Shown: positions 1-21,822, counted from the stretch's first letter. The stretch: 44,655 bases of DNA from Macrostomum lignano (GCA_002269645.1 NIVC01000167.1:1-44655); one strand, 5' to 3'. The notes: generated by a model not told the origin, from the sequence alone. Numbers and translations: made by a program.

Positions 1-23
1 AAAGAAAAGTAAAACGCCTGCAG

Positions 24-3000
24 TTTTCAACATGTAGAGCCGGGTTCAAAGCGTGTCGGTCAGCCAGCTAATAGTGGAGCAGCTTCAGACACTGACAAGG
101 TGGAGACGGATGCAGAGCGTGTCGATCAGCCAGCTAATAGTGCAGCAGCTTCAGATACTGACAAGGTGGAGCCGGATGCTGAGCGTGTCGATCAGCCAGC
201 TAAGAATGCAGCAGCTTCAGATACTGACCTGGTGGAGCCAGATGCAGAGCGTGTCGATCAGCCAGCTAATAGTGCAGCAGCTTCAAGTATTAACCAGGTG
301 GAGCCGGATGCAGAGCCAGCTAATAATGGAGCAGCTTCAGACGCTGACCAGGTGGAGCCGGATGCAGAGCGTGTCGATCAGCCAGCTAATAGTGCAGCAG
401 CTTCAGATACTGACCTGGTGGAGCCGGATGCAGAGCGTGTCGATCAGCCAGCTAATAGTGGAGCAGCTTCAGATACTGACCTGGTGGAGCCGGATGCTGA
501 GCGTGTCGATCAGCCAGCTAAGAGTGCAGCAGCTTCAGACACTGACCTGGTGGAGCCGGATGCAGAGCGTGTCGATCAGCCAGCTAATAGTGCAGCAGCT
601 TCAGATACTGACCTGGTGGAGCCAGATGCAGAGCCAGCTAATAGTGGACCAGCTTCAGATACTGACCTGGTGGAGCCAGATGCAGAGCCAGCTAATAATG
701 GAGCAGCTTCAGACACTGACCAGGTGGAGCCGGATGCAGAGCGTGTCGATCAGCCAGCTAATAGTGCAGCAGCTTCAGATACTGACAAGGTGGAGCCGGA
801 TGCAGAGCGTGTCGATCAGCCAGCTAATAGTGAAGCAGCTTCAGACGCTGACCTAGTGGAGCCGGATGCAGAGCGTGTCGATCAGCCAGCTAATAGTGGA
901 GCAGCTTCAGATACTGAAAAGGTGGAGCCGGATGCAGAGCGTATCGATCAGCCAGCTAAGAGTGCAGCAGCTTCAGATACTGACAAGGTGGAGCCGGATG
1001 CAGAGCGTGTCGATCAGCCAGCTAATAGTGCAGCAGCTTCAAGTATTAACCAGGTGGAGCCGGATACAGAGCCAGCTAATAATGGAGCAGCTTCAGACAC
1101 TGACCAGGTGGAGCGGATGCAGAGCGTGTCGATCAGCCAGCTAATAGTGCAGCAGCTTCAGATACTGACAAGGTGGAGCGGATGCAGAGCGTGTCGATCA
1201 GCCAGCTAATAGTGCAGCAGCTTCAGATACTGACCTGGTGGAGCCGGAGGCAGAGCGTGTCGATCAGCCAGCTAATAGTGCAGCAGCTTCAGACACTGAC
1301 CTGGTGGAGCCGGATGCAGAGCGTGTCGATCAGCCAGCTAATAGTGCAGCAGCTTCAGATACTGACCTGGTGGAGCCGGATGCAGAGCGTGTCGATCAGC
1401 CAGCTAATAGTGGAGCAGCTTCAGATACTGACCTGGTGGAGCCGGATGCAGAGCGTGTCGATCAGCCAGCTAATAGTGCAGCAGCTTCAGACGCTGACAA
1501 GGTGGAGCCAGAGGCAGAGCCAGCTAATAGTGGACCAGCTTCAGACACTTACCTGGTGGAGCTGGAGGCAGAGCGTGTCGATCAGCCAGCTAATAGTGCA
1601 GCAGCTTCAGATACTGACCTGGTGGAGCCGGATGCAGAGCGTGTCGATCAGCCAGCTAATAGTGGAGCAGCTTCAGATACTGACAAGGTGGAGCCGGAGG
1701 CAGAGCGTGTCGATCAGCCAGCTAATAGTGCAGCAGCTTCAGACACTGACCTGGTGGAGCCGGATGCAGAGCGTGTCGATCAGCCAGCTAATAGTGCAGC
1801 AGCTTCAGACGCTGACAAGGTGAAGCCGGAGGCAGAGCCAGCTAATAGTGGACCAGCTTCAGACACTTACCTGGTGAAGCTGGAGGCAGAGCGTGTCGAT
1901 CAGCCAGCTAATAGTGCAGCAGCTTCAGATACTGACAAGGTGGAGCCGGATGCAGAGCGTGTCGATCAGCCAGCTAATAGTGGAGCAGCTTCAGATACTG
2001 ACCTGGTGGAGCCGGATGCTGAGCGTGTCGATCAGCCAGCTAAGAGTGCAGCAGCTTCAGACACTGACCTGGTGGAGCCGGATGCAGAGCGTGTCGATCA
2101 GCCAGCTAATAGTGCAGCAGCTTCAGATACTGACCTGGTGGAGCCAGATGCAGAGCCAGCTAATAGTGGACCAGCTTCAGATACTGACCTGGTGGAGCCA
2201 GATGCCGAGCCAGCTAATAGTGCAGCAGCTTCAGATACTGACAAGGTGGAGCCGGATGCAGAGCGTGTCGATCAGCCAGTTAATAGTGCAGCAGCTTCAG
2301 ATACTGACAAGGTGGAGCCGGATGCAGAGCGTGTCGATCAGCCAGCTAATAGTGGAGCAGCTTCAGACGCTGACCTAGTGGAGCCGGATGCAGAGCGTGT
2401 CGATCAGCCAGCTAATAGTGGAGCAGCTTCAGATACTGAAAAGGTGGAGCCGGATGCAGAGCGTGTCGATCAGCCAGCTAATAGTGGAGCAGCTTCAGAT
2501 ACTGACAAGGTGGAGCGGATGCAGAGCGTGTCGATCAGCCAGCTAATAGTGCAGCAGCTTCAAGTATTAACCAGGTGGAGCCGGATACAGAGCCAGCTAA
2601 TAATGGAGCAGCTTCAGACACTGACCAGGTGGAGCCGGATGCAGAGCGTGTCGATCAGCCAGCTAATAGTGCAGCAGCTTCAGATACTGACAAGGTGGAG
2701 CCGGATGCAGAGCGTGTCGATCAGCCAGCTAATAGTGGAGCAGCTTCAGATACTGACCTGGTGGAGCCGGAGGCAGAGCGTGTCGATCAGCCAGCTAATA
2801 GTGCAGCAGCTTCAGACACTGACCTGGTGGAGCCGGATGCAGAGCGTGTCGATCAGCCAGCTAATAGTGGAGCAGCTTCAGACACTGACCTGGTGAGCCG
2901 GATGCAGAGCGTGTCGATCAGCCAGCTAATAGTGCAGCAGCTTCAGATACTGACCTGGTGGAGCCAGATGCAGAGCCAGCTAATAGTGGACCAGCTTCAG

Positions 3001-6000
3001 ATACTGACCTGGTGGAGCCAGATGCAGAGCCAGCTAATAATGGAGCAGCTTCAGACACTGACCAGGTGGAGCCGGATGCAGAGCGTGTCGATCAGCCAGC
3101 TAATAGTGCAGCAGCTTCAGATACTGACAAGGTGGAGCCGGATGCAGAGCGTGTCGATCAGCCAGCTAATAGTGAAGCAGCTTCAGACGCTGACCTAGTG
3201 GAGCCGGATGCAGAGCGTGTCGATCAGCCAGCTAATAGTGGAGCAGCTTCAGATACTGAAAAGGTGGAGCCGGATGCAGAGCGTGTCGATCAGCCAGCTA
3301 AGAGTGCAGCAGCTTCAGATACTGACAAGGTGGAGCCGGATGCAGAGCGTGTCGATCAGCCAGCTAATAGTGCAGCAGCTTCAAGTATTAACCAGGTGGA
3401 GCCGGATACAGAGCCAGCTAATAATGGAGCAGCTTCAGACACTGACCAGGTGGAGCCGGATGCAGAGCGTGTCGATCAGCCAGCTAATAGTGCAGCAGCT
3501 TCAGATACTGACAAGGTGGAGCCGGATGCAGAGCGTGTCGATCAGCCAGCTAATAGTGCAGCAGCTTCAGATACTGACCTGGTGGAGCCGGAGGCAGAGC
3601 GTGTCGATCAGCCAGCTAATAGTGCAGCAGCTTCAGACACTGACCTGGTGGAGCCGGATGCAGAGCGTGTCGATCAGCCAGCTAATAGTGCAGCAGCTTC
3701 AGATACTGACCTGGTGGAGCCGGATGCAGAGCGTGTCGATCAGCCAGCTAATAGTGGAGCAGCTTCAGATACTGACAAGGTGGAGCCAGAGGCAGAGCCA
3801 GCTAATAGTGGACCAGCTTCAGACACTTACCTGGTGGAGCTGGAGGCAGAGCGTGTCGATCAGCCAGCTAATAGTGCAGCAGCTTCAGATACTGACCTGG
3901 TGGAGCCGGATGCAGAGCGTGTCGATCAGCCAGCTAATAGTGGAGCAGCTTCAGATACTGACAAGGTGGAGCCGGAGGCAGAGCGTGTCGATCAGCCAGC
4001 TAATAGTGCAGCAGCTTCAGACACTGACCTGGTGGAGCCGGATGCAGAGCGTGTCGATCAGCCAGCTAATAGTGCAGCAGCTTCAGACGCTGACAAGGTG
4101 AAGCCGGAGGCAGAGCCAGCTAATAGTGGACCAGCTTCAGACACTTACCTGGTGAAGCTGGAGGCAGAGCGTGTCGATCAGCCAGCTAATAGTGCAGCAG
4201 CTTCAGATACTGACAAGGTGGAGCCGGATGCAGAGCGTGTCGATCAGCCAGCTAATAGTGGAGCAGCTTCAGATACTGACCTGGTGGAGCCGGATGCTGA
4301 GCGTGTCGATCAGCCAGCTAAGAGTGCAGCAGCTTCAGACACTGACCTGGTGGAGCCGGATGCAGAGCGTGTCGATCAGCCAGCTAATAGTGCAGCAGCT
4401 TCAGATACTGACCTGGTGGAGCCAGATGCAGAGCCAGCTAATAGTGGACCAGCTTCAGATACTGACCTGGTGGAGCCAGATGCAGAGCCAGCTAATAGTG
4501 CAGCAGCTTCAGATACTGACAAGGTGGAGCCGGATGCAGAGCGTGTCGATCAGCCAGTTAATAGTGCAGCAGCTTCAGATACTGACAAGGTGGAGCCGGA
4601 TGCAGAGCGTGTCGATCAGCCAGCTAATAGTGGAGCAGCTTCAGACGCTGACCTAGTGGAGCCGGATGCAGAGCGTGTCGATCAGCCAGCTAATAGTGGA
4701 GCAGCTTCAGATACTGAAAAGGTGGAGCCGGATGCAGAGCGTGTCGATCAGCCAGCTAATAGTGGAGCAGCTTCAGATACTGACAAGGTGGAGCCGGATG
4801 CAGAGCGTGTCGATCAGCCAGCTAATAGTGCAGCAGCTTCAAGTATTAACCAGGTGGAGCCGGATACAGAGCCAGCTAATAATGGAGCAGCTTCAGACAC
4901 TGACCAGGTGGAGCCGGATGCAGAGCGTGTCGATCAGCCAGCTAATAGTGCAGCAGCTTCAGATACTGACAAGGTGGAGCCGGATGCAGAGCGTGTCGAT
5001 CAGCCAGCTAATAGTGGAGCAGCTTCAGATACTGACCTGGTGGAGCCGGATGCAGAGCGGGTTGATCAGCCAGCTAATAGTGCAGCAGCTTCAGATACTG
5101 ACAAGGTGGAGCCGGATGCAGAGCGTGTCGATCAGCCAGCTAATAGTGGAGCAGCTTCAGATACTGACCTGGTGGAGCCGGAGGCAGAGCGTGTCGATCA
5201 GCCAGCTAATAGTGCAGCAGCTTCAGACACTGACCTGGTGGAGCCGGATGCAGAGCGTGTCGATCAGCCAGCTAATAGTGGAGCAGCTTCAGACACTGAC
5301 CTGGTGGAGCCGGATGCAGAGCGTGTCGATCAGCCAGCTAATAGTGCAGCAGCTTCAGATACTGACCTGGTGGAGCCAGATGCAGAGCCAGCTAATAGTG
5401 GACCAGCTTCAGATACTGACCTGGTGGAGCCAGATGCAGAGCCAGCTAATAATGGAGCAGCTTCAGACACTGACCAGGTGGAGCCGGATGCAGAGCGTGT
5501 CGATCAGCCAGCTAATAGTGCAGCAGCTTCAGATACTGACAAGGTGGAGCCGGATGCAGAGCGTGTCGATCAGCCAGCTAATAGTGAAGCAGCTTCAGAC
5601 GCTGACCTAGTGGAGCCGGATGCAGAGCGTGTCGATCAGCCAGCTAATAGTGGAGCAGCTTCAGATACTGAAAAGGTGGAGCCGGATGCAGAGCGTGTCG
5701 ATCAGCCAGCTAAGAGTGCAGCAGCTTCAGATACTGACAAGGTGGAGCCGGATGCAGAGCGTGTCGATCAGCCAGCTAATAGTGCAGCAGCTTCAAGTAT
5801 TAACCAGGTGGAGCCGGATACAGAGCCAGCTAATAATGGAGCAGCTTCAGACACTGACCAGGTGGAGCCGGATGCAGAGCGTGTCGATCAGCCAGCTAAT
5901 AGTGCAGCAGCTTCAGATACTGACAAGGTGGAGCCGGATGCAGAGCGTGTCGATCAGCCAGCTAATAGTGCAGCAGCTTCAGATACTGACCTGGTGGAGC

Positions 6001-9000
6001 CGGAGGCAGAGCGTGTCGATCAGCCAGCTAATAGTGCAGCAGCTTCAGACACTGACCTGGTGGAGCCGGATGCAGAGCGTGTCGATCAGCCAGCTAATAG
6101 TGCAGCAGCTTCAGATACTGACCTGGTGGAGCCGGATGCAGAGCGTGTCGATCAGCCAGCTAATAGTGGAGCAGCTTCAGATACTGACCTGGTGGAGCCG
6201 GATGCAGAGCGTGTCGATCAGCCAGCTAATAGTGCAGCAGCTTCAGACGCTGACAAGGTGGAGCCAGAGGCAGAGCCAGCTAATAGTGGACCAGCTTCAG
6301 ACACTTACCTGGTGGAGCTGGAGGCAGAGCGTGTCGATCAGCCAGCTAATAGTGCAGCAGCTTCAGATACTGACCTGGTGGAGCCGGATGCAGAGCGTGT
6401 CGATCAGCCAGCTAATAGTGGAGCAGCTTCAGATACTGACCTGGTGGAGCCGGAGGCAGAGCGTGTCGATCAGCCAGCTAATAGTGCAGCAGCTTCAGAC
6501 ACTGACCTGGTGGAGCCGGATGCAGAGCGTGTCGATCAGCCAGCTAATAGTGCAGCAGCTTCAGACCCTGACAAGGTGAAGCCGGAGGCAGAGCCAGCTA
6601 ATAGTGGACCAGCTTCAGACACTTACCTGTTGGAGCTGGAGGCAGAGCGTGTCGATCAGCCAGCTAATAGTGCAGCAGCTTCAGATACTGACAAGGTGGA
6701 GCCGGATGCAGAGCGTGTCGATCAGCCAGCTAATAGTGGAGCAGCTTCAGATACTGACCTGGTGGAGCCGGATGCTGAGCGTGTCGATCAGCCAGCTAAG
6801 AGTGCAGCAGCTTCAGACACTGACCTGGTGGAGCCGGATGCAGAGCGTGTCGATCAGCCAGCTAATAGTGCAGCAGCTTCAGACAGTGACCTGGTGGAGC
6901 CGGAGGCAGAGCCAGCTAATAGTGCAGCAGCTTCAGATACTGACCAGGTGGAGCCGGATGCAGAGCGTATCGATCAGCTAACTAAGAGTGTAGCAGCTTC
7001 AGGCGTTGATAAGGTGGATTTAAGTGCAGAGCCTGTTGATCACTCATCATCACAGTCCAGGGTAGTTACAGGTGTTTACCATGTAGAGCCAATGGCAGGG
7101 CATTTCGTTCAGCCAGCTAAGAGTGAAGCACCTGTAGGTATTAACCAAGTGAAGCCCGGTGCAGAGCTTAATGATCAGTCAACTAATAGTGGATTGGAAT
7201 CTGGTGTTTACGAGGTGGAACCGGAAGTAGAGCGTGTTGATCAATCATCTCAGTCCAGAGCAGTCGCAGGTGTTGACCAGGTGGAGCCGGATGCAGAGCG
7301 TGTCGATCAGCCAGCTAATAGTGCAGCAGCTTCAGGTATTAACCAGGTGGAGCCGGATGCAGAGCCAGCTAATAATGGAGCAGCTTCAGACACTGACCAG
7401 GTGGAGCCGGATGCAGAGCGTGTCGATCAGCCAGCTAATAGTGCAGCAGCTTCAGACGCTGACAAGGTGGAGCCGGAGGCAGAGCCAGCTAATAGTGCAG
7501 CAGCTTCAGACACTGACCTGGTGGAGCCGGAGGCAGAGCGTGTCGATCAGCCAGCTAATAGTGCAGCAGCTTCAGACACTGACCTGGTGGAGCCGGATGC
7601 AGAGCGTGTCGATCAGCCAGCTAATAGTGGAGCAGCTTCAGACACTGACCTGGTGGAGCCGGATGCAGAGCATGTCGATCAGCCAGCTAATAGTGCAGCA
7701 GCTTCAGACGCTGACCTGGTGGAGCCGGATGCAGAGCGTGTCGATCAGCCAGCTAATAGTGCAGCAGCTTCAGACGCTGACAAGGTGGAGCCGGAGGCAG
7801 AGCCAGCTAATAGTGCAGCAGCTTCAGACACTGACCTGGTGGAGCCGGAGGCAGAGCCAGCTAATAGTGCAGCAGCTTCAGACACTGACCTGGTGGAGCC
7901 GGAGGCAGAGCCAGCTAATAGTGCAGCAGCTTCAGATACTGACCTGGTGGAGCCGGAGGCAGAGCCAGCTAATAGTGCAGCAGCTTCAGACAGTGACCTG
8001 GTGGAGCCGGAGGCAGAGCCAGCTAATAGTGCAGCAGCTTCAGACACTGACCTGGTGGAGCTGGAGGCAGAGCCAGCTAATAGTGCAGCAGCTTCAGACA
8101 CTGACCTGGTGGAGCCGGATGCAGAGCGTGTCGATCAGCCAGCTAATAGTGCAGCAGCTTCAGATACTGACAAGGTGGAGCCGGATGCAGAGCGTGTCGA
8201 TCAGCCAGCTAATAGTGCAGCAGCTTCAGACACTGACCTGGTGGAGCCGGAGGCAGAGCCAGCTAATAGTGCAGCAGCTTCAGATACTGACCTGGTGGAG
8301 CCGGAGGCAGAGCCAGCTAATAGTGCAGCAGCTTCAGACACTGACCTGGTGGAGCTGGAGGCAGAGCCAGCTAATAGTGCAGCAGCTTCAGACACTGACC
8401 TGGTGGAGCCGGATGCAGAGCGTGTCGATCAGCCAGCTAATAGTGCAGCAGCTTCAGATACTGACAAGGTGGAGCCGGATGCAGAGCGTGTCGATCAGCC
8501 AGCTAATAGTGCAGCAGCTTCAGACACGGACCTGGTGGAGCCGGATGCAGAGCGTGTCGATCAGCCAGCTAATAGTGGAGCAGCTTCAGATACTGACAAG
8601 GTGGAGCCGGATGTAGAGCGTGTCGATCAGCCAGCTAATAGTGGAGCAGCTTCAGACACTGACCTGGTGGAGCCGGATGCAGAGCGTGTCGATCAGCCAG
8701 CTAATAGTGGAGCAGCTTCAGATACTGACAAGGTGGAGCCGGATGCAGAGCGTGTCGATCAGCCAGCTAATAGTGCAGCAGCTTCAGGTATTAACCAGGT
8801 GGAGCCGGATGCAGAGCCAGCTAATAATGGAGCAGCTTCAGACACTGACCTGGTGGAGCCGGATGCAGAGCGTGTCGATCAGCCAGCTAATAGTGCAGCA
8901 GCTTCAGACGCTGACAAGGTGGAGCCGGAGGCAGAGCCAGCTAATAGTGCAGCAGCTTCAGACACTGACCTGGTGGAGCCGGAGGCAGAGCCAGCTAATA

Positions 9001-9962
9001 GTGCAGCAGCTTCAGACACTGACCTGGTGGAGCCGGAGGCAGAGCCAGCTAATAGTGCAGCAGCTTCAGACACTGACCTGGTGGAGCCGGAGGCAGAGCC
9101 AGCTAATAGTGCAGCAGCTTCAGACAGTGACCTGGTGGAGCCGGAGGCAGAGCCAGCTAATAGTGCAGCAGCTTCAGATACTGACCAGGTGGAGCCGGAT
9201 GCAGAGCGTATCGATCAGCTAACTAAGAGTGTAGCAGCTTCAGGCGTTGATAAGGTGGATTTAAGTGCAGAGCCTGTTGATCACTCATCATCACAGTCCA
9301 GGGTAGTTACAGGTGTTTACCATGTAGAGCCAAAGGCAGGGCATTTCGTTCAGCCAGCTAAGAGTGAAGCACCTGTAGGTATTAACCAAGTGAAGCCCGG
9401 TGCAGAGCTTAATGATCAGTCAACTAATAGTGGATTGGAATCTGGTGTTTACGAGGTGGAACCGGAAGTAGAGCGTGTTGATCAATCATCTCAGTCCAGA
9501 GCAGTCGCAGGTGTTGACCAGGTGGAGCTAAATGCGGAACGTGTTGATCATCAAGATAAGAGTAAAGCAGCTTCAGGCGTTGACCAGGTGCATCCAGGTG
9601 CAGAGCGTGTTGATCAATCATCTCAGTCCAGTGCATTCGCAGGTGTTGACCAGGTGGAGCCGGATGCAGAGCGTGTCGATCAGCCAGCTAATAGTGCAGC
9701 AGCTTCAGGTATTAACCAGGTGGAGCCGGATGCAGAGCCAGCTAATAATGGAGCAGCTTCAGACACTGACCAGGTGGAGCCGGATGCAGAGCGTGTCGAT
9801 CAGCCAGCTAATAGTGCAGCAGCTTCAGACACGGACCTGGTGGAGCCGGATGCAGAGCGTGTCGATCAGCCAGCTAATAGTGGAGCAGCTTCAGATACTG
9901 ACAAGGTGGAGTCGGATGCAGACCGCATCGATTCCGGTGACCAAAAAGTGAGAGCTAAATAA
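24..9962 (+). CDS. Giant exon/ORF of an acidic low-complexity repeat protein (~3,300 aa; units VEPDAERVDQPANSAAASDTD[K/L], 22 aa, and VEPDAEPANSGPASDTDL, 18 aa). N-terminus probably lies outside the window. Interrupted by four 1-nt deletions (~1114, ~1179, ~2516, ~2895).
   Basis: ORF track pieces 100-1209, 1238-2896, 2575-3198 and 2958-9962 (2334 aa uninterrupted) encode the same repeat. Unit lengths are multiples of 3, and all three minus frames hit a stop in every long unit. A candidate acceptor ctgcag ends at 23. The frame ends at TAA 9960-9962 or at candidate donor GTGAGA 9948. Confidence 0.75.
40..9915 (+). repeat. Coding tandem array of 66-nt and 54-nt units with ~2.2-2.4-kb higher-order repeats
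   Basis: Unit gtggagccggatgcagagcgtgtcgatcagccagctaatagtgcagcagcttcagatactgac(aag/ctg); the short unit lacks cgtgtcgatcag. The rare variant tcaagtattaac recurs at ~283/1041, 2561/3381 and 4841/5793. Confidence 0.95.
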
Positions 9963-10053
9963 TTTTTTGAACGTTGTAAATTTTAGCATTTAGGCATTTA
10001 ATTACTGAAGGAGTTTAAAATTTGTTTCGAATTGGCTGTGCTCTGATTTACAG

Positions 10054-10113
10054 AGTTCTACGCTGTCGGCACTGTTTGCTCGCACCCTGCGACGCGGGTG
10101 CTGCCCGCTGTAG
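10054..10113 (+). CDS. Putative terminal exon of the acidic repeat protein: SSTLSALFARTLRRGCCPL*
   Basis: Phase-0 donor AAA|GTGAGA at 9947/9948, a 106-nt AT-rich intron, and acceptor ctctgatttacag ending 10053. The GC-rich 60 nt that follow are in frame and end at TAG 10111-10113. Confidence 0.55.
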   Translation, partial: SSTLSALFARTLRRGCCPL

Positions 10114-10415
10114 CTGTGCGGGACAGACAAACTTCAAGAGAAAAAAGTAAAATTAGTAATAATTGTGCGCTGATTGGCAGCAATCGTAGAGAGCTGCGTT
10201 TACCTTAAGACTGAAAATTTTCATTGAGATCGATTTGTCGCTGAAAATTATATTTGATCCTAAATTTTCAATCAATGTTGCGATCTCGATATTACATTTG
10301 ATTACTGTTACCTGTAGCGCGTAGTTTGCATCACAGCTTATGAGCTGTCGCTTCTCCGACCTTATTTATCCCCAAGAAGTTGGGATACTATAGTTTTAAA
10401 GCAGGATTCAGTCAT

Positions 10416-11220
10416 GAGAAACAGGGATCCAATCTCCATAGGAAATAGGGATACTATCCCCATGCAAAAAGGGATACCATCCCCATGGGAAACAGGGACA
10501 CCATCCCCATGGGAAACAGAGGCACCATCCCCATGGGAAACAGGGACACCATCCCCATGGGAAACAGAGACACCATCCCCATGGGAAACAGGGACACCAT
10601 CCCATGGGAAACAGAGACACCATCCCCATGGGAAACAGGGACACCATCCCCATGGGAAACAGGGACACCATCCCCATGGGAAACAGAGACACCATCCCCA
10701 TGGGAAACAGGGACACCATCCCCATGGGAAACAGGGACACCATCCCCATGGGAAACAGAGACACCATCCCCATGGGAAACAGGGACACCATCCCCATGGG
10801 AAACAGAGACACCATCCCCATGGGAAACAGGGACACCATCCCCATGGGAAACAGGGACACCATCCCCATGGGAAACAGGGACACCATCCCCATGGGAAAC
10901 AGGGACACCATCCCCATGGGAAACAGGGATACCATCCCCATGGGAAACAGGGACACCATCCCCATGGGAAACAGGGACACCATCCCCATGGGAAACAGGG
11001 ACACCATCCCCATGGGAAACAGGGACACCATCCCCATGGGAAACAGGGACACCATCCCCATGGGAAACAGGGACACCATCCCCATGGGAAACAGGGACAC
11101 CATCCCCATGGGAAACAGAGACACCATCCCCATGGGAAACAGAGACACCATCCCCATGGGAAACAGGGACACCATCCCCATGGGAAACAGGGACACCATC
11201 CCCATGGGAAACAGGGACAC
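10416..11220. repeat. 24-bp minisatellite (ccatccccatgggaaacagggaca)n, ~33 copies
   Basis: Directly visible. It explains the six overlapping ORFs (MGNRDTIP, WETGTPSP, HGKQGHHP and reverse frames). Confidence 0.97.
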
Positions 11221-12076
11221 AATACCTATCATAGACCCAGCTCGCCGCACTGCCGCTTCGCAGGTGTGCCCGCTGTCAGCCAGGGGGCTCCGTCGTGCCG
11301 CTCTGCCTCTTCGCCTCTGTTTTCAACGCGAGCGAAAACTCGGTGGCGGGTATTGAGCTATAAACCTAATTAGAAGTTTTACAAGTATTTTTATACTATT
11401 TTTTGATTGTTTGACGGCAAACAGTTTTGTTTAAAATACCTCAATTTTCGTGAATTGAACTTTTCAACTTTTTTACCCGCAATCATTTTGATCTAACAGT
11501 TTAATTGATATAGTGTAATAATTCAATTTGATTCATTCATTCAAAGTTTTTCTGTTTTTTTGATAGATTTTTTCCTAAGTTTGATTAGTTTTTGATTGCA
11601 GCATTTAAAATTAGATAAAAATTGACAAAAATTGGTGCTTTCGTCTCGAGTTAACTTATTTCTACGATTTACTCCTTGAGCAACTTGTCTACGACTTTTT
11701 AGATTAATATTATTCTACACATACTGCTGATTAATACGATAGTTCATTGTTTAAACATTTCTATACTATGCACTGGTTTTATTGTATTAAATTAATTTTT
11801 GTCAAATACAATCCCAGTCCTTGGCAAAACTTGTTTCTATTCAACTTCTCCATGGTGACAAAATGTTTGTTTTGCATTAGTTGATTACTTAGAGTAGTAA
11901 GTATTGAGGCTTTATGTGGTGATTGACCTAAAAAGCCGGGCCGTTTAGGGACTGCATAGCTCTGTTTCCATTAGCACAGAAAACTTCCCCGAACTTATTT
12001 GATTGCTTCTAGAGGATATGCCTCGCAGTGGAATAATACTAATGTGCTTTTCTCAGCCATTGCTTCAGAATTAGCA

Positions 12077-12440
12077 CTTGATTGCACCATAGTTGGGACT
12101 TGATTGCACCATAGTTGGGACTTGATTGCACCATAGTTGGGACTTAACTGCACCATAGTTGGGACTTCTCTGCATCATAGTTGGGACTCGATTGCATCAG
12201 AGTTGGGACCTGATTGCATCATAGTTGGGACCTGATTGCTCCAGAGTTGGGACTTAACTGCACCATAATTGGAACTTGATTGCATCATAGTTGGGACCTG
12301 ATTGCTCCAGAGTTGGGACTTAACTGCACCATAATTGGAACTTGATTGCATCATAGTTGGGACCTGATTGCTCCAGAGTTGGGACTTAACTGCACCATAA
12401 TTGGAACTTGATTGCATCAGAGTTGGGACTTGATTGCACC
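12077..12440. repeat. 22-bp minisatellite (cttgattgcaccatagttggga)n with a 66-bp superperiod, immediately upstream of the JMJD5 acceptor
   Basis: Directly visible; variants taactgcac and ctccagag recur every three units at ~12230-12420. Confidence 0.95.
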
Positions 12441-12462
12441 AGTCTATATAATCCCTTCGCAG

Positions 12463-14219
12463 CCGGACGAGCTGCTGGCTGACTTCCTGTCCGGTTGCGT
12501 GGATTTCCCGCCGGCTGACGCGGACGTGGCTCCGCTGGTGCTGTACGAATTCGGCCGCCTAATGGACCGATTCGCCTCGACGGAACTTCGGCCGGATGAA
12601 GCGGAGAATCTGGCTGCCGATTGCCGCTCTATGCAGGAGCTGGCCTGGCACCGGCTGCATACCGGCCACTGGAAGGACGTGCCGGTGTTCTGGCGCCGGC
12701 TCTACGCCCGCCTGGCTTTCATTGTCGTCTGGCTTGGCCAGCAGCAGCGCCAAGCTGCCGACAGTCAGGTCGGTGACGAGCGCCTGCACGAACTCCTGGC
12801 CGTCTGCGACCGCGGCCTGCTGCTCGGGCACCCGCTGGCCCAGCTGGCCGGCCTGGCCGATCGGCTGCACGCACGGCTCCCCGCTGTGCCTGCCTGCCCG
12901 CCCTGCCGCTGCTGTCCGCTGGCTGAAGCCACTCGCGACTGGCCCGCTGCGTCCGCCGGGCCGGCCCGCGGTCGCACGGTCGTCCGGCTGACTCGGCCGT
13001 CCTTAGAAGAGTTCGGCCGCCTTAAAGAGCCAGTCATTGTATGCGGCGTCATGGACCACTGGCCGGCTATGCAGCGCTGGGACTGGCGGTACCTGCTGGA
13101 CAGATGGGGCCACCGAACTGTGCCTGTGAGATAGCACACGATTTACGATAGCAAATTCTTAGTAACACATTCCTAATAGCATATTCCCAATAACACATTC
13201 CCAGTAACACATTCCCAATAACACATTTCCAAAAGAAAATTCCCGATGGCACATTCCCGATGGCACATTCCCGATAGCACATTCCCGATGGCACATTCCC
13301 GATGGCACATTCCCGATGGCACATTCCCGATGGCACATTCCCGATAGCACATTCCCGATGGCACATTCCCGATGGCACATTCTCGATGGCACATTCCCGA
13401 TAGCACATTCCCGATGGCACATTCCCGATAGCACATTCCCGATGGCACATTCCCGATGGCATATTCCCGATGGCACATTCCCGGTGTCACATTCCCGATG
13501 GCACATTCTCGATGGCACATTCTTGATGGCACATTCCCGATAGCACATTCCCGATGGCACATTCCCGATGGCACATTCTCGATGGCACATTCCCGATAGC
13601 ATATCCAGATAGTAGATTCCAATTCACTCTAACCGCCTTCATCAAGATCGAGATCGGTTCCCGCTACACAGACGACGACTGGGGCCAGCAGCTGATGCCG
13701 CTCAGCGAATTTTTTAGCCGCTTCGTGGCGCCCCGATGCGCCGCTGCCGCCGACTCCGGTCCCAAGGCCTGCGAGCGGCTGCCCTGTGGCTACCTGGCGC
13801 AGCACGGCCTGCTGGACCAGCTGCCCGACCTGGCCAGCGACACGGACGTGCCCGACTACTGCTGCCTAGGCGACGGCGAGCCCGACGTCAACTGCTGGTT
13901 CGGTCCGCCGCACACCGTGTCGCCCTGTCACCAAGATCCCAAACCGAATCTGCTCTGCCAGGTGCGCGGATTCAAAGCTGTCCGCCTTTACCCGGCGGAG
14001 CAGTCGGACCGGCTCTACCCGGTTGGCGGCGGGCACCTCCTGGCCGGCACCAGCCGCATCGATGTGGAGCGGCCCGACCTGGCCGAGTTTCCCCTGTTCG
14101 ACGGAGCTGACGAACTGCTGGCGCTGCTCGGGCCAGGCGAGGCGCTGTTCATCCCGGCCGGCTGGTGGCACCACGTGCGCAGCCTGTCCTGCAGCCTGAG
14201 CGTCAGCTTCTGGTTTTAA
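12463..14219 (+). CDS. KDM8: JmjC domain protein JMJD5/KDM8 (2-oxoglutarate/Fe(II) hydroxylase). Exons 12463-13125 and 13647-14219, 411 aa plus an unlocated start.
   Basis: Motifs AWHRLHTGHWKDVPVFWRRLY, DHWPAMQRW, RTVP|IEIGSRYTDDDWGQQLM, GYLAQHGLLDQ, WFGPPHTVSPCHQDP and WWHHVRSLSCSLSVSFWF* match the JMJD5 family, with the HxD...H triad intact. Splice sites: CCT|GTGAGA and ttcatcaag|ATC, phase 0; upstream acceptor cccttcgcag|CCG. Confidence 0.92.
13160..13600. repeat. 14-bp intronic minisatellite (attcccgatggcac)n in the JMJD5 intron
   Basis: Directly visible; it explains the spurious MCHRECAIGNVPSG ORFs. Confidence 0.96.
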
Positions 14220-14280
14220 GTTGGACCTGCAGCTCTGGCTTGCGATAGCTTCTGACCAACCCGGCAGTTGTGTGGGTTGG

Positions 14281-14480
14281 ATTGGAGTACAGTAGAGTAG
14301 AATGGAGTACAGTAGGGTAGAATGGAGTACAGTAGGGTAGATTGGAGTACAGTAGGGTAGATTGGAGTACAGTAGGGTAGATTGGAGTACAGTAGGGTAG
14401 ATTGGAGTACAGTAGGGTAGATTGGAGTACAGTAGGGTAGATTGGAGTACAGTAGGGTAGATTGGAGTACAGTAGGGCAG
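14281..14480. repeat. 20-bp minisatellite (attggagtacagtagggtag)n, ~10 copies, just 3' of the JMJD5 stop
   Basis: Directly visible. Confidence 0.96.
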
Positions 14481-15482
14481 ATTATAGTACTAGTTCGTGA
14501 ACCATTTAAGTGTACGATTTGGCATTTTCTGTGCTTTCTTTAGGTTTCCTTACTTTTCTAATCCATGTCTAATAAGTTTGAGAATAATTCAGACTGATTT
14601 AGAAACCGTTGGGTTGAGTCGCAATGAAAATGATGATCACTGCTTGCTAATAATGCTTTAAGCTTAATTTTTTGCCTGTAAAACCGGATGTTTGGCTGGG
14701 TGTTTAAATGTAAGTTAACCAACAAGTACGAGTAAATTCTGAGCTTACTGACTGTAGCAGTGAAAATTAATGTACATGTACAAGAATATGTTTGGTTTGC
14801 CATGATGTAAAACACTGCTTTTTATATTGTATCTATTGCTAATAGTAAAATGTTATTATGTAAGTCCGAAACCTTCTGGCTTAGCGTGATAATTATGGGC
14901 ATTTAGAGCCGGGCCCGTAAAAAAAAGTGGATTGCTTAGCAACTTTATCAGTCATTGTTGAACTTCCTCTGAAGCTTGAGTGCATAACACTCGAGAAATC
15001 CGAAAGGATTATTTTCGAAAGAATCACTAATCCACAGCAATACGCAGTAAGTCTTAGATGATGAAAGAAATACGGCGACCATGTAGATGTCCATGAAGAT
15101 GTGTAAGTTCCAAGCCTGCCGGACCAATTTCCAGGCTGCTCTGTCTGTCAGAACTTCCAGCGCTTCATTGCTCGAGGAAGTTGAAAGCTACGCTCGTAAT
15201 TGCTTGATTGCTTTAAGTGGTTAACAGAAACTTCTAAGTTTGCGTACTCAATTTTTGGAAACCAACTAGAGACTGGATCAGTTGCATCCACTGGAATCCA
15301 CCGTGGTGACTCACTTGTACTGAGCGCCTTCCAGAGAGTCTAATGAATTCGGTAAAAATACTGTGTCGTAAAGTTGCTGCCATACTCAAATGACAACCTA
15401 CCAGACCACTAGGGTGCAAGGCTTTGATAAGCGTGAATCCATTGTGTGCTCGGTTGCACAGCGCAATGCTAGCACTGTTATC

Positions 15483-16711: not shown

Positions 16712-18527
16712 ATGGCTTTTGTGTTCGGTAAGTATAAACTGGCTGACAGACTGAACCACCTTCTCTTCATCTGCTCTAACAGCGCTCAAACCGAAACTTG
16801 TCTGCAGCTCTCATTTGGGCTTTGGTTGCCACGTCAACCATGGCCAGCGGCGAGCTGGTGACCCTGACGGCCGAGCAGAAGCAGGCCATTCTGGACGCGC
16901 ACAACGTGCTGAGGGCCCGGACTGCGATGGGTCTCGTCGGGAACCAGCCGAAGGCTGCCAATATGCCAGCTCTGGTGAGTGCCGCTTCCCTCCCTCGCTA
17001 GGCTGTTCTCCTCAGCGGTAAACGCGTCTGAAACTTGGCGTCACGAACTCTGGTTCAATGCCGTGCAAGCTGGGGCTTGTCCACTAAAATTGGAGGGGGG
17101 GTTATCGTGCGGTTTGCACCAATCAGGGCCAACCTTTAAGGCTCAGAGTGTACATGCCTGACTATTTGCAAGTCCGAGGACGCTGTGCACCCTGGGTGAG
17201 CGTGTGTAAGAGTGCGTGCCTGCCCACAGTATTGACGCGCTTAGCCTAGCGGTGTGACAGAATTGTCCAGAAGCCCTCCCGCAAATATTATTATTATCTA
17301 GCTATTCCTCTGCTATCATTACCAGCCCTGGTGGGTGCAACCAGCTGCTATCGCTAATCACCTTCCTTTCTCCTTCGCAGGAGTGGGACGACCGCCTGAT
17401 GGACAGCGCCAACAACTGGGTGAAGCAGTGCGTGGCCGGACATGACAGCGGATCCGACCGAGCCCTGACCGGATATAGCTGGGTTGGCCAGAACTGGGCC
17501 GGCGGATACAGCGGCAACTTCAGCTAGTGCGTCTTGTGCAATATTGCAAGAATACGTTGTCAGATTATGATTTCCAGAATTGAGCACTTGTATGCTAACT
17601 CACTTTGCTCACCGTTACAGCTACGTTGACTTGTGGTTCCGCGAGTACAAGGATTACACCTTCGCTACTAAGTCTTGCTCGGCAGTGTGCGGCCATTACA
17701 CCCAGGTCGTGTGGGCCAAGACCACATTGGTTGGCTGCGGCGTCTCCAGGTGCAGCAACTACCCGTACACCATTGTGTGCAACTACGCCACAGGCGGCAA
17801 CTACAATGGCGAATATCCATACGTGAGCGGCGACGATGCCAGCCAGTGCAACGGCGAATACGTGTTCAAGCAGCGCGGCCTCTGCATGCGCAAGGACCAG
17901 TGCAACTCCGGCGACTGCACCTGCAGCATCTCGAGCTGCTTGAACGGCGGCGTTTTGGACTCCGCCAACTGCAAGTGCACCTGCCCGGACGGCTTCTACG
18001 GAAACAAATGCGAGAGTGAGTTGCCGTAGAATCTAGGAGCTAAGCCTCTGGGGGAACGGAGTGGCTCGGCTGATGTGCCAAAGGTTCGATGCTCAGCCGT
18101 TGGCTTGTGCATAAGCTGTGTGTACATGCCTGACCATGTGAACGTCAGGGCCGCTGTATACTCTGTGTGAGTGCGTGCCTGCGTACGTATGCGCGTGCTC
18201 AGGGCATGATTGCCTGCTTCCTCGCTGGCTGCGGCTCCACTGTCGTCTTGATCTGCGGCAGCGTCTAAAACTATGGCCCTTACTAAAAACTTATTGAGCT
18301 CGTGGTGAAATGACTGACAACCCCCAACCCTGTCCTGCCCCCGCAACTTTGCAGAGCCGTGCGTCGACTCCACCCTCGCTAGCGACTACTGCAGCTACAG
18401 CACCATCTGCAGCTACAGCAGCTACGCGCCCAGGTGCCCCAAGAAGTGCAACCTGTGCAAGCCGGTCACGCTGCGCGATCTCAACGTGGTGAACAGGGAC
18501 AACGTGAAGAGCCGATCGCCCATGTGA
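16712..18527 (+). CDS. Secreted CAP/SCP (CRISP/venom-allergen-like) protein with C-terminal Cys-rich, EGF-like and ShKT modules. Exons 16712-16727, 16808-16974, 17381-17526, 17621-18015, 18355-18527; ~298 aa.
   Basis: Signal peptide MAFVFALIWALVATSTMASG; CAP motifs ILDAHNVLR, EWDDRL, VGQNW, WFRE, CGHYTQVVWAKT, VGCG, IVCNY..GGN; EGF CLNGG...CKCTCPDGFYGNKCE; ShKT CVD...C...C...CPKKCNLC. All four introns are GT-AG with matching phases (1,0,2,1). Confidence 0.9.
17001..17298 (+). mobile_element. tRNA-derived SINE-like insertion in CAP intron 2
   Basis: A-box-like tcctcagcggta, B-box-like ggttcaatgcc (17052-17062) and an (att)n tail at 17286-17297. Body motifs are shared with CAP intron 4 and with ~20500-20600. 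Confidence 0.55.
18035..18290 (+). mobile_element. Second, diverged copy of the same SINE-like family in CAP intron 4
   Basis: B-box-like ggttcgatgc. gtgtacatgcctgac (18120-18134) is identical to 17148-17162 and gagtgcgtgcctgc (18169-18182) is identical to 17210-17223. Confidence 0.5.
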
Positions 18528-20682: not shown

Positions 20683-21822
20683 ATGGCAGCCCCGTGCACG
20701 GTTACCATGGAGATGATCACTGAAGCGACCGACTTTGTGCGCGCCCGCTACTCGGAGCAGCCGGAGATCGGGATCGTCTGCGGCTCTGGCCTGGGTGAAC
20801 TGGCCGACAGTGTCGAGGAGCCGGCTGTGCGCATCCGCTATGGCGACATCCCGCATTTCGCGCAGAGCACGGTGCACGGCCACTCCGGCGTGCTGGTGCT
20901 CGGCCGGCTGGCCGGCAGGCGGGTCTGCGTCATGCAGGGCCGGCTTCATCCCTACGAGGGCCTCACCTACCTGCAGTGCTCCTTCCCGATGCGGGTGATG
21001 GCCAAGCTGGGCGTGTCGGTGGTCATCTTGACCAACGCGGCCGGCTCACTGCGGCCTGAGTTCCAGCCAGGCGACATCATGACCATCCGGGATCACATTA
21101 ATTTTCCCGGCTTCTCCGGACGCAGCCCGTTGCAGGGCCTCAGCCCGGAGGTGTTCGGCGACCGATTCGTGCCGATGAATAATGCGTACGATAAGAAGCT
21201 GCGGGACAAGGTGAGAGGACTGCGACCCTACGGTGCTTTTTTGGGAGCCCACTTTACCGTAGCATGTTCACAGAATTCAACTGAAGGGAAGTGTTCTCAA
21301 CATCGGATCCTAACGTTTGAAGGTCAAATACTATTCACGGATAAATAAGTCGCTAATATTCGAAATTTACTTAGTCGCTGTCTCTGTCTTGAGCTCTGAA
21401 TCTACTACCGATGTGTGAATGACCATAAACAACTCCATGTCAAGCATCAATTGACTGACACGGCCGCCTTGCACCGTCCCGCTTTCCCGCAGGTGGCAGC
21501 CGCAGCCGCAGCCAGCGGAGTGTCGCTCCGCACCGGTGTCTACGCTATGCTGGGCGGGCCGCACTTCGAGACTCCGGCCGAGTGCCGAATGCTGCGCAGT
21601 CTGGGCGCGGACGTGGTCGGCATGAGCACCGTGCACGAGACCATCGTGGCCAGGCAGTGCAAAGTCCGCGTCATCGGCTTCTCCATCATCACCAACGTGG
21701 TGGTTACCGACTCGGACTCGGAGCTTGACCAGACCGGCGTGCACCTGGAGGTGCTCAAGGCCAGCAAGCTGGCCGCCAATCGGCTGCAGTCCATCATCGC
21801 CCACACCATCGACCAGTTGTAG
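20683..21822 (+). CDS. PNP: Purine nucleoside phosphorylase (eukaryotic trimeric type). Exons 20683-21210 and 21493-21822, 285 aa.
   Basis: Motifs IGIVCGSGLG, STVHGHSG.LVLG, MQGRLHPYEG, ILTNAAG, DHINFPG, GGPHFETPAE, LGADVVGMSTVHE and FSIITN (substrate-specificity Glu and catalytic Asn retained). Intron AAG|GTGAGA...ttcccgcag|GTG, phase 0. Confidence 0.95.

What the first reader, a model, noticed from the sequence alone, without database searches (positions are those of the whole stretch)
24..9962. ~3,300-aa acidic repeat protein encoded in one ~9.9-kb exon
Seen: ~160 units of 22 or 18 aa rich in A, D, E, S and P, net about -4 to -5 per long unit. The core units have no aromatic or Cys residues, and each has an S-D-T-D acidic-kinase (CK2-type) site. 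Length variation is in whole codons (loss of RVDQ) and many variants are synonymous (GAT/GAC, CCG/CCA, GCT/GCA), which argues for a real coding constraint. I recognise no family. Inference: a giant disordered polyanion, possibly a spacer, Ca2+ binder or structural/secretory component.
Basis: partly seen in the sequence, partly recalled or inferred. Interest (0 to 1): 0.7.

Follow-up and report, generated by a model that had tools for sequence, protein, structure and literature searches.

The report
Giant acidic repeat gene fragment, flatworm
A 9.9-kb tandem array at the start of a Macrostomum lignano (flatworm) contig probably encodes the tail of a very large, very acidic, unstructured orphan protein, but the assembly breaks its reading frame four times and nothing shows that it is expressed.

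Summary
The array is real: 37-9922, 66-nt period, 157 peptide units (110 of 22 aa, 41 of 18 aa). It is not one open exon. Four single-base deletions (after 1114, 1179 and 2516, and at 2894) move the acidic frame through frames 1, 3, 2, 1 and 3. The longest intact acidic ORF is 2889-9959 (2357 aa).

The window is Macrostomum lignano contig NIVC01000167.1, bases 1-44655, so the array sits at a contig end. The assembly is Canu plus Pilon only. A homeologous contig carries a shorter copy (86 units) with the same first unit, the same C-terminal tail apart from one residue, and its own -1 frame breaks. It also has 861 nt of ORF-like, non-repeat sequence directly upstream, so an exon start at base 24 is not supported.

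The frame breaks look like uncorrected long-read deletions. All 10 are -1, none is shared between copies, and their ratio to singleton substitutions is about 18 times the neutral ratio.

For coding: all propagated length variants are whole codons, and only the acidic frame stays open in the diverged units. Against: synonymous changes are no commoner than chance (8 of 33), GC3 is low, there is no start codon, no annotated gene, and no homologue among billions of proteins.

Best reading (about 0.55): the disordered polyanionic C-terminal repeat domain of an orphan gene. Its function is unknown.

The parts
1..36 (+). Non-repeat lead-in, the last 36 nt of a longer upstream ORF-like region. The contig, and so the window, starts here.
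   Evidence: Homologous to L004:838-875. In L004 the preceding 861 nt are tiled by stop-free stretches of 69, 125 and 134 codons, against 168 +/- 29 in shuffles, 0 of 5000 reaching the observed sum. Window coordinates equal NIVC01000167.1 coordinates.
37..9922 (+). Tandem array of 66-nt and 54-nt units: 157 peptide units.
   Evidence: TRF. Unit segmentation. Internal segmental duplications at 98 % identity or more: 1480-2520 with 3758-4798, 2892-3788 with 5304-6200, 1177-1877 with 5933-6633, 6854-7290 with 9095-9531.
34..1114 (+). Acidic register, block 1 (window frame 1).
1108..1119 (+). Frame break 1: GTGGAGCGGATG, one C missing after 1114 (88 units have GTGGAGCCGGATG).
1173..1184 (+). Frame break 2: the same one-C deletion, after 1179, in the next unit.
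1180..2516 (+). Acidic register, block 3 (window frame 2).
2510..2521 (+). Frame break 3: the same one-C deletion, after 2516. The duplicated copy of this segment (4788) is intact.
2890..2901 (+). Frame break 4: CTGGTGAGCCGG, one G of GTGGAG missing.
2889..9962 (+). Longest uninterrupted acidic ORF (2357 codons plus TAA at 9960-9962). It has no ATG before 7092.
6966..7364 (+). Diverged unit block, copy 1. The first 111 codons match copy 2 (RIDQLTKS... PVDHSSSQ... FVQPAKSE... LNDQSTNS... RVDQSSQS...); the last 22 codons of this range are a canonical-type unit (RVDQPANSAAASGINQVEPDAE).
9207..9605 (+). Diverged unit block, copy 2: 133 codons, about 30 % from consensus, and shared with the homeologous contig.
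   Evidence: 0 stops in the acidic frame, 9 in the alternative frame, 6-17 in the other four. 10 differences in 399 nt against L004, at codon positions 1:3:6.
9921..9962 (+). Unique 13-aa C-terminal tail (RIDSGDQKVRAK) and stop codon. The homeolog has the same tail with one residue changed (S to P).
9963..10412 (+). 3' flank, a possible 3' UTR. The first 226 nt are identical to the homeolog; the flank overall is 98.4 % identical.

Best explanation
The array is the C-terminal, recently and rapidly expanded tandem-repeat domain of a large gene specific to Macrostomum lignano. The 5' part of that gene lies off the start of this contig.

Read in the acidic frame, the array encodes more than 3,300 residues of intrinsically disordered polyanion, about -5 per 22-aa unit and about -665 in total.

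The four frame breaks in the window, and the corresponding breaks in the homeologous copy, are uncorrected single-base deletions of the PacBio/Canu consensus. Short-read polishing cannot work here, so the gene is probably intact in the animal.

Shown: the anatomy, the frame tracking, the homeolog comparison and the character of the indels.

Inferred: that the array is translated, and that the protein acts as an extended, charge-repelled chain that binds cations or polycationic partners or fills space. Copy number changes through unequal exchange of multi-unit blocks: 157 units in this copy and 86 in the homeolog, which differ by about 2 %.
For: IDENTITY
- The purine nucleoside phosphorylase (PNP) gene in the window is 100 % identical to M. 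lignano BOX15_Mlig024950g1.
- The window equals NIVC01000167.1:1-44655 of GCA_002269645.1.

ASSEMBLY
- The assembly was made with Canu 1.4 and polished only with Pilon, using Bowtie2- and STAR-mapped short reads (PMC5730564).
- 93 % of read pairs map to several places among the three subgenomes (PMC10733133).

FRAME BREAKS LOOK LIKE ERRORS
- All 10 frame shifts seen in the two copies are -1.
- None is shared between the copies or with the internal duplicate of its own segment.
- The higher-order lags 2278 and 4756 become multiples of 3 only when the missing bases are counted.
- In the 5' parts there are 6 frameshifts against 3 singleton substitutions. In 7.4 kb of neighbouring non-repeat homeolog alignment the ratio is 8 to 71, and the 1-bp indels there are balanced 3:3.
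- The neighbouring 297-nt coding array shows the same pattern: 13 shifts, 9 of them -1.

CODING SIGNS
- The period and every propagated length variant are multiples of 3.
- In the diverged block only the acidic frame is open; simulation gives P about 0.06.
- No minus-strand frame is open for 150 codons or more.
- GC content by codon position 1/2/3 is 0.82/0.50/0.36, with G at first positions 0.59.
- The homeolog keeps the same first unit, and the same C-terminal tail and stop apart from one residue change.
- The 861 nt upstream in the homeolog are strongly ORF-like. At the array boundary each contig lacks one base that the other has, and the union reads through as KKSKTPAGFQHVEPGSKRVGQPA.

DISORDER
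- Charge-hydropathy calculation. AlphaFold2 mean pLDDT 44, pTM 0.13. No Pfam hit.
Against: - No gene is annotated over the array in either contig, although the annotation is transcript-based.
- No identical or similar protein was found among 5.8 billion clusters or 1.84 billion representatives. The only hits were unrelated low-complexity repeat proteins.
- Variation within the array shows no purifying selection on amino acids: synonymous changes are 24 % of distinct variants against 25 % expected.
- The homeolog comparison is too small to decide: 4 synonymous and 5 non-synonymous codon changes, with 2.5 % divergence against a genome average of 2.2 % and a coding average of 1.1 %.
- GC3 is 0.36, against 0.78-0.89 in the neighbouring PNP and JmjC genes.
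- The acidic frame has no ATG for 7 kb, so translation depends on an upstream part that could not be retrieved.
- The annotated upstream CDS in the homeolog ends at a TGA 860 nt before the array.
- The frame breaks cluster at the 5' side in both copies, which a uniform error model does not predict (P about 3e-4).
Confidence: 0.55

Rival explanations
1. Decaying gene copy. The array was coding, but in this recently polyploid genome with three homeologous copies, this copy and the NIVC01000769.1 copy are real pseudogenes with true frameshifts and a true nonsense codon. At most one copy would still be functional.
For: - Both copies examined carry several disabling changes: 4 to 5 in the window, and 5 frameshifts plus a TGA in L004.
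- The TGA at L004:12-14 is a substitution-type lesion, which is not typical of long-read consensus error. The same frame stays open for 69 more codons after it.
- Variation within the array looks neutral.
- Homeolog divergence in the diverged block (2.5 %) matches the genome-wide value rather than the coding value.
- The breaks in L004 are not near a contig end.
Against: - The indel-to-substitution ratio in the broken parts is about 18 times the neutral ratio measured next door.
- All 10 shifts are -1.
- The 3' 7.07 kb of the window array and the 3' 4.4 kb of the L004 array carry no frameshift at all.
- The neighbouring 99-aa-repeat gene, which has a clean unique C-terminal domain, shows the same deletion-biased breaks only inside its array.
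Confidence: 0.2
2. Non-coding minisatellite. A 66-nt satellite, perhaps seeded from an old coding exon, lies in an intergenic region or a 3' UTR and is never translated. Its open frame is a by-product of a stop-free consensus unit.
For: - Simple and tandem repeats make up 15 % of this genome (PMC5730564), and the window alone holds about 20 arrays.
- Two of the three plus-strand frames are open in the consensus, so openness is cheap.
- Variants fall 11:11:11 over the codon positions and the synonymous share equals chance.
- There is no annotation, no homologue and no ATG, and GC3 is unlike that of the neighbouring genes.
Against: - Periods of 66, 54, 63, 72 and 84 nt are all multiples of 3. 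The clearly non-coding arrays nearby have periods of 14, 20, 22, 23/24 and 34.
- The diverged block keeps only the acidic frame open (0 stops against 9).
- The minus strand is closed.
- The array abuts an ORF-like non-repeat region on the same strand.
- The unique C-terminal tail and stop are conserved between homeologs, with one residue changed.
Confidence: 0.2
3. The other open frame is the real one. The array would then encode the hydrophobic, Gln-rich repeat VSISQLIVQQLQILTWWSRMQS, which does contain ATG codons.
For: This frame is stop-free in the consensus and yields ATG-started ORFs of about 300 aa (3208-4101, 4666-5610, 5620-6579).
Against: - It is interrupted every 300 codons or so, and has 9 stops in the 133-codon diverged block.
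- G at first codon positions is only 0.09.
- None of these ORFs is in the protein collection.
Confidence: 0.02

Closest known systems
Mlig-ap1 and Mlig-ap2, the giant repeat-rich adhesive proteins of the same species (PMC6410801)
   Same: They are very large proteins (5,407 and 14,794 aa) with long tandem-repeat regions and no homologues outside the group. Their genes and transcripts came out fragmented in the assemblies and had to be curated by hand.
   Different: They are Cys-rich and carry vWD, TIL, EGF, C-type lectin and TSP-1 domains. Mlig-ap1 repeats are Lys/Arg-rich with pI above 14. Mlig-ap2 repeats are 255 and 221 aa long. The present array has no Cys, has 22- and 18-aa units, and has a pI of about 4: the opposite charge.
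Acidic, rapidly evolving disordered repeat regions of animal proteins, such as ACRC/GCNA ('acidic repeat containing') and prothymosin-type polyanions (from my own knowledge)
   Same: Asp/Glu-rich, low-complexity, disordered, lineage-specific tandem repeats with variable copy number and weak constraint on individual residues.
   Different: There is no sequence similarity. GCNA also carries a SprT protease domain, whereas no folded domain is visible here. This array is far longer.
Titin PEVK and poly-E segments, which act as entropic springs (from my own knowledge)
   Same: Short Pro-, Glu- and Val-containing repeat units in a giant protein, with a disordered, extended chain.
   Different: P+E+V+K is only about 31 % here, against about 70 % in PEVK. 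The unit length and sequence are unrelated. Nothing links this locus to muscle.
Acidic matrix proteins of biomineralisation, such as phosphophoryn/DSPP, Aspein and coral acid-rich proteins (from my own knowledge)
   Same: Secreted polyanions with tandem acidic repeats and Ser residues in an acidic context.
   Different: Those proteins are far richer in Asp or Asp-Ser-Ser; Asp is 15 % here. M. lignano is not known to have a mineral skeleton. A signal peptide cannot be tested because the N-terminus is missing.
Ordinary non-coding minisatellites of the M. lignano genome
   Same: Head-to-tail array, higher-order duplications, and a large copy-number difference between homeologs.
   Different: The period and all propagated length variants are whole codons, and one frame is preserved through the diverged units.

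Membership tests
Protein-coding tandem-repeat domain | The unit length and all established length variants are multiples of three. | tested here: met
   Lengths are 66, 54, 63, 72 and 84 nt. The only lengths that are not multiples of 3 are four singleton 1-bp deletions.
Protein-coding tandem-repeat domain | One uninterrupted reading frame runs through the whole array. | tested here: not met
   The assembly has five register blocks. The longest intact one is 2889-9959, 2357 codons. The breaks are probably consensus errors, but this is not proven.
Protein-coding tandem-repeat domain | The coding frame stays open in diverged units while other frames collect stops. | tested here: met
   In block 9207-9605 there are 0 stops in the acidic frame, 9 in the alternative frame and 6-17 in the rest. 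Simulation gives P(no stop) = 0.058.
Protein-coding tandem-repeat domain | Synonymous changes exceed non-synonymous changes. | tested here: not met
   Within the array there are 8 synonymous and 25 non-synonymous variants, against a chance expectation of 49:144, spread 11:11:11 over the codon positions. Between homeologs there are 4 synonymous and 5 non-synonymous changes, at positions 1:3:6, which is too few to decide.
Protein-coding tandem-repeat domain | A start codon, or continuity with upstream coding sequence. | tested here: inconclusive
   The acidic frame has no ATG before 7092, and the window starts 36 nt before the array. The homeolog has 861 nt of ORF-like lead-in that is offset by -1 at the boundary. 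The union of the two contigs reads through.
Protein-coding tandem-repeat domain | Transcript or peptide evidence. | not testable with these tools
   No gene is called over the array and no such protein is in the collections. Reads from the array would map to many places and be discarded by standard pipelines, so the lack of annotation is weak evidence.
Intrinsically disordered polyanion | High net charge with low mean hydropathy, and no predicted fold or known domain. | tested here: met
   Net charge per residue -0.20, hydropathy 0.404 against a boundary of 0.485, pI about 4.05. AlphaFold2 mean pLDDT 44, pTM 0.13, coil, from a single-sequence run. No Pfam hit.
Mlig-ap1/Mlig-ap2 adhesive proteins | Cys-rich, with KR-rich or 221/255-aa repeats and vWD, TIL, EGF or TSP-1 domains. 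| tested here: not met
   0 Cys, K+R 5.6 %, no Pfam domain. The defining features are taken from PMC6410801.
Mucin-type PTS domain | Pro, Thr and Ser dominate the composition (typically more than 40 %). | tested here: not met
   S 9.8, T 3.9 and P 9.2 %, which sum to 23 %. Asp and Glu make up 25.7 %.
Titin PEVK-type repeats | About 70 % P, E, V and K in units of about 28 aa. | tested here: not met
   P+E+V+K is about 31 %, and the units are 22 and 18 aa.
   The motif is present: SDTD in 107 of 157 units and SD[TASP][DE] in 131. Phosphorylation cannot be tested here.

The most novel reading that the evidence does not exclude
The polyanion, or 22- to 40-aa acidic peptides cut from it after the single Arg of each long unit, is the still-unidentified negatively charged releasing factor of the flatworm duo-gland adhesive system. 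On this reading it is secreted by the releasing gland to neutralise the Lys/Arg-rich cohesive protein Mlig-ap1 (pI above 14) and detach the animal. The published model (PMC6410801, PMC9229212) predicts such a negatively charged substance and had not identified it by 2022. Nothing here links this locus to the tail plate or to secretion.
Probability: 0.03. Interest if true: 0.8.

Novelty: new member of a known kind. Interest (0 to 1): 0.3.

Why it matters
If the array is translated, it would be one of the largest and most acidic proteins of a regeneration and bioadhesion model animal. The current annotation misses it because tandem repeats defeat both short-read polishing and transcript assembly.

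It also shows how fast such domains change. The two homeologs differ by about 2 % in sequence but have 157 and 86 units.

There is a practical lesson as well. In the Mlig_3_7 assembly, long coding arrays carry deletion-type frame breaks, so ORF-based gene calls in repeats are unreliable.

Beyond that, this is an orphan repeat protein with no assigned function. It would matter more only if it proved to be a gland secretion, such as the missing release factor.

Tried and rejected
- Homology searches. A word-indexed HMMER search with the C-terminal 269 aa found nothing. A full phmmer scan of 1.84 billion representatives with 450 aa gave 9 hits. The five best were read and are unrelated low-complexity repeat proteins such as TGSDTGNLA and EPLSTVAEKEVDLVEAKE repeats. 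I rejected them as homologues.
- Pfam on the array, on the lead-in pieces and on the neighbouring repeat gene gave nothing above threshold. Rfam on the whole window gave nothing.
- Exact look-ups of eight window ORFs found none in the collection: two acidic-frame reads of the main ORF, the 13-1206 open stretch, four alternative-frame ATG ORFs, and the neighbouring repeat gene.
- An exact 35-mer of the repeat consensus had 0 hits in the JGI metagenome contigs.
- A profile of the 22-aa units against the six-frame translation of the homeolog's lead-in gave no significant match. The resemblance I had noticed by eye (SDTEGSVSKDAEE against SDTDLVEPDAER) is therefore only anecdotal.
- I tried to reach the third homeologous contig (NIVC01000692.1) and the 1089-aa upstream gene. 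P0125 is not on any contig. I rebuilt the 298-aa CAP protein from GT-AG intron combinations, but none of 7 candidates matched, and a wider enumeration timed out. The upstream gene sequence and the third array therefore remain unseen.
- A first wrap-around alignment with linear gap costs scattered the 12-nt deletion and was discarded. One unit-splitting pattern was faulty and its result was replaced (redone).
- Comparing conservation of the coding block with the flank gave no sign of constraint. The 3' flank is 98.4 % identical and the diverged block 97.5 %.
Full report
WHERE THE WINDOW COMES FROM

The window holds ordinary eukaryotic genes. They are a JmjC/Cupin_8 gene (12466-14219), a CAP-domain gene (16712-18527) and a purine nucleoside phosphorylase (PNP) gene with a canonical GT-AG intron (20683-21822).

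The spliced PNP protein is 100 % identical to BOX15_Mlig024950g1 of Macrostomum lignano. The locus fetched for it from NIVC01000167.1 is identical to window 10683-31822. Gene coordinates in the record equal window coordinates. The window is therefore NIVC01000167.1:1-44655 of the Mlig_3_7 assembly (GCA_002269645.1). The array begins 36 nt from the contig's first base.

Two further contigs, NIVC01000769.1 and NIVC01000692.1, carry the same gene order at 97-98 % identity. These are the homeologous copies expected in this hidden polyploid, which has three subgenomes with an SNP rate of 2.2 % overall and 1.1 % in coding sequence (PMC10733133).

THE OBSERVATION

The array is real: 37-9922, period 66, 151 copies by TRF.
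- Units are 22 and 18 aa, with RVDQ missing from the short ones.
- The units are rich in A, D, E, S and P.
- The consensus unit has a net charge of -5.
- Most units contain SDTD.

It is not one ORF. Tracking diagnostic tripeptides shows the acidic register moving from frame 1 to 3 to 2 to 1 to 3. Four single-base deletions cause this. Three are the same C lost from GAGCCGG (at 1114, 1179 and 2516) and one is a G lost from GTGGAG (about 2894). The longest intact acidic ORF is 2889-9959, 2357 codons, ending at TAA 9960-9962. With a placeholder base at the four sites the array reads as 3310 codons with only the terminal stop.

IS THE OPEN FRAME MEANINGFUL?

Openness alone is cheap. The consensus unit has no stop in two of the three plus-strand frames.

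Among 143 core units there are 33 distinct variants, spread 11:11:11 over the codon positions, and 8 are synonymous. Chance predicts 25 %.

Other features do favour a coding origin in the acidic frame:
- Every length variant that has spread is a whole number of codons (54, 63, 72, 84 nt). The clearly non-coding arrays nearby have periods of 14, 20, 22, 24 and 34. The 24-nt array has period 23 in the homeolog.
- The old, roughly 30 %-diverged block at 9207-9605 has no stop in the acidic frame. It has 9 stops in the other consensus-open frame and 6-17 in the remaining four. Random divergence of that size leaves the acidic frame open in only 5.8 % of simulations.
- The minus strand has no open stretch of 150 codons or more.
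- The acidic frame shows G at first codon positions at 0.59, and GC by codon position of 0.82/0.50/0.36.

Against coding, GC3 is far below that of the neighbouring PNP and JmjC genes (0.78-0.89). The homeolog comparison of the diverged block is too small to show constraint: 10 differences in 399 nt, 4 synonymous and 5 non-synonymous.

THE HOMEOLOGOUS COPY AND THE LEFT BOUNDARY

NIVC01000769.1 (locus L004) holds the same array in a shorter form: 876-6337, 86 units. It has the same degenerate first unit, the same diverged block and the same C-terminal tail, RIDPGDQKVRAK against RIDSGDQKVRAK in the window. It has its own two -1 frame breaks, at different sequence positions (GAGCCGATG and CCGGAGCAG), followed by a clean 1470-codon ORF.

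Upstream of its array lie 861 nt of non-repeat sequence. Three stop-free stretches of 69, 125 and 134 codons tile this sequence, each offset by -1 from the one before. Their sum is 328 codons, against 168 +/- 29 in shuffles, with 0 of 5000 shuffles reaching it.

An annotated 1089-aa CDS ends at a TGA at L004:12-14. The same frame stays open for 69 more codons after that TGA.

At the array boundary the window has GCAG-TTTTCAACATGTAG and L004 has GCAGGTTTTCAACA-GTAG. Each lacks one base that the other has, and the union reads KKSKTPAGFQHVEPGSKRVGQPA without a break.

The acidic frame has no ATG until 7092. If it is translated at all, it must therefore be the continuation of upstream coding sequence. 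The proposed exon start at base 24 is not supported.

ARE THE FRAME BREAKS REAL?

Mlig_3_7 was assembled with Canu 1.4 from PacBio reads. It was polished only with Pilon, using short reads mapped by Bowtie2 and STAR (PMC5730564). 93 % of read pairs map to several places (PMC10733133). Uncorrected consensus deletions are therefore expected in exactly such repeats.

The pattern fits consensus error:
- All 10 shifts in the two copies are -1.
- None is shared between the copies or with the internal duplicate of its own segment (for example 2516 against the intact 4793).
- The higher-order duplication lags 2278 and 4756 become multiples of three only when the missing bases are counted.
- In the broken 5' parts there are 6 frameshifts against 3 singleton substitutions. 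In 7.4 kb of neighbouring non-repeat homeolog alignment there are 8 frameshifting indels against 71 substitutions, with 1-bp indels balanced 3:3. That is an 18-fold excess of indels.
- The neighbouring 297-nt array encodes a 99-aa charged repeat with a clean 400-aa unique C-terminus. It shows 13 shifts, 9 of them -1, all inside the array.

Two observations do not fit simple random error:
- The breaks cluster at the 5' side in both copies. For the window this is the contig end, where coverage is low. For L004 it is not.
- The TGA that ends the annotated upstream CDS is a substitution-type lesion.

I therefore keep a real-pseudogene rival at 0.2.

WHAT THE PRODUCT WOULD BE

The frame-tracked product of the array has these properties:
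- 3310 aa, 338 kDa, 25.7 % Asp+Glu, net charge about -665.
- Computed pI about 4.05.
- Net charge per residue -0.20, with mean hydropathy 0.404 against the disorder boundary of 0.485.
- Two prolines per unit.

AlphaFold2 gives coil with pLDDT 44. That was a single-sequence run and so is weak support. No Pfam family matches and no homologue exists in the two large protein libraries.

The most likely physical behaviour is an extended, self-repelling polyanionic chain that binds cations or basic partners or fills space. This is inference from composition only.

Copy number changes by duplication of multi-unit blocks and has nearly doubled, or halved, since the homeologs split.

COMPARISON WITH KNOWN THINGS

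The closest analogues are giant lineage-specific repeat proteins. [quoted passage not shown] They are Cys-rich, carry known domains and, in the case of ap1, are extremely basic (PMC6410801).

The defining features of mucin PTS domains, titin PEVK repeats and Asp-rich biomineralisation proteins are not met on composition. The array is not a member of any curated family.

I file it as a new member of a known kind: an orphan, acidic, disordered tandem-repeat domain.

MOST NOVEL READING NOT EXCLUDED

The flatworm adhesion model predicts an unidentified negatively charged releasing substance that neutralises basic Mlig-ap1 (PMC6410801). It was still unknown in 2022 (PMC9229212).

A secreted polyanion, or acidic peptides cut after the single Arg of each long unit, would fit the chemistry. 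The authors, however, predicted a small molecule. Nothing here shows secretion or tail expression. I give this reading 3 %.

VERDICT

- Probabilities: 0.55 for a real coding C-terminal repeat domain whose frame breaks are assembly errors; 0.2 for decaying copies; 0.2 for a non-coding satellite; 0.02 for the alternative frame.
- Interest is 0.3.

Noticed in passing
window 32940-44655, minus strand: A second giant coding-type array: a 297-nt (99-aa) unit, 35.7 copies by TRF, running off the window end. It encodes a highly charged Glu/Arg-rich repeat (KEDELKAPEREREREAARQEELVSHRRRERRRRDERARRDIARAERRFEDDQFKVDEIVQADEEVLVDEDVRHQIDLFDDKVLEDREASEIEEDLPPMR). About 400 unique C-terminal residues follow it, ending at 32940. 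The intact ORF 32940-36788 is 1283 aa. Further into the array there are 13 frame shifts, 9 of them -1. No Pfam hit, and the ORF is not in the protein collection.
   Followed up: partly
window 10413-11220; L004:6828-8902; L003:1-161: A 24-nt minisatellite (CATGGGAAACAGGGACACCATCCC, 34 copies) lies just downstream of the acidic array. In the homeolog it has period 23 and 89 copies, so it is non-coding. In the third contig an annotated 654-aa gene model ends inside it, which is probably spurious.
   Followed up: partly
window 12076-12441, 13166-13601, 14280-14483, 26279-26637, 26863-27538, 28056-28198, 29226-29419, 29903-30136, 30662-31724: A dense series of minisatellites with periods of 22, 14, 20, 34, 14, 20, 20/39, 8-28 and 20 nt, none a multiple of 3 except the sub-period 39. 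The 14-nt array at 13166-13601 lies inside the span of the annotated JmjC gene. Copy numbers differ between homeologs (multiple BLAST offsets).
   Followed up: no
window 9963-10188 against L004:6367-6592: The first 226 nt after the stop codon are 100 % identical between homeologs, while the next 220 nt carry 7 substitutions and 3 indels. This could reflect a conserved 3' UTR or recent gene conversion.
   Followed up: no
L004:1-875 (NIVC01000769.1:276242-277116): An annotated 1089-aa CDS ends at TGA (12-14), but its frame stays open for 69 more codons. An ATG (MKILYEHNF...) lies about 52 nt after the TGA. The acidic-repeat ORF could be a continuation of that gene or a second cistron of a trans-spliced unit; about 7 % of M. 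lignano transcriptional units encode two or more proteins (PMC5730564). The upstream gene sequence could not be retrieved.
   Followed up: partly
window 1-2900 and L004:222-1968: Frame-breaking 1-bp deletions cluster at the 5' side of the array in both homeologous contigs. Only the window copy is at a contig end. A uniform error model does not explain this.
   Followed up: partly
window 12466-14219, 16712-18527, 20683-21822: The JmjC/Cupin_8, CAP-domain (with an EGF-like C-terminus) and PNP genes keep the same order in all three homeologous contigs. PNP is identical at the protein level in all three.
   Followed up: partly
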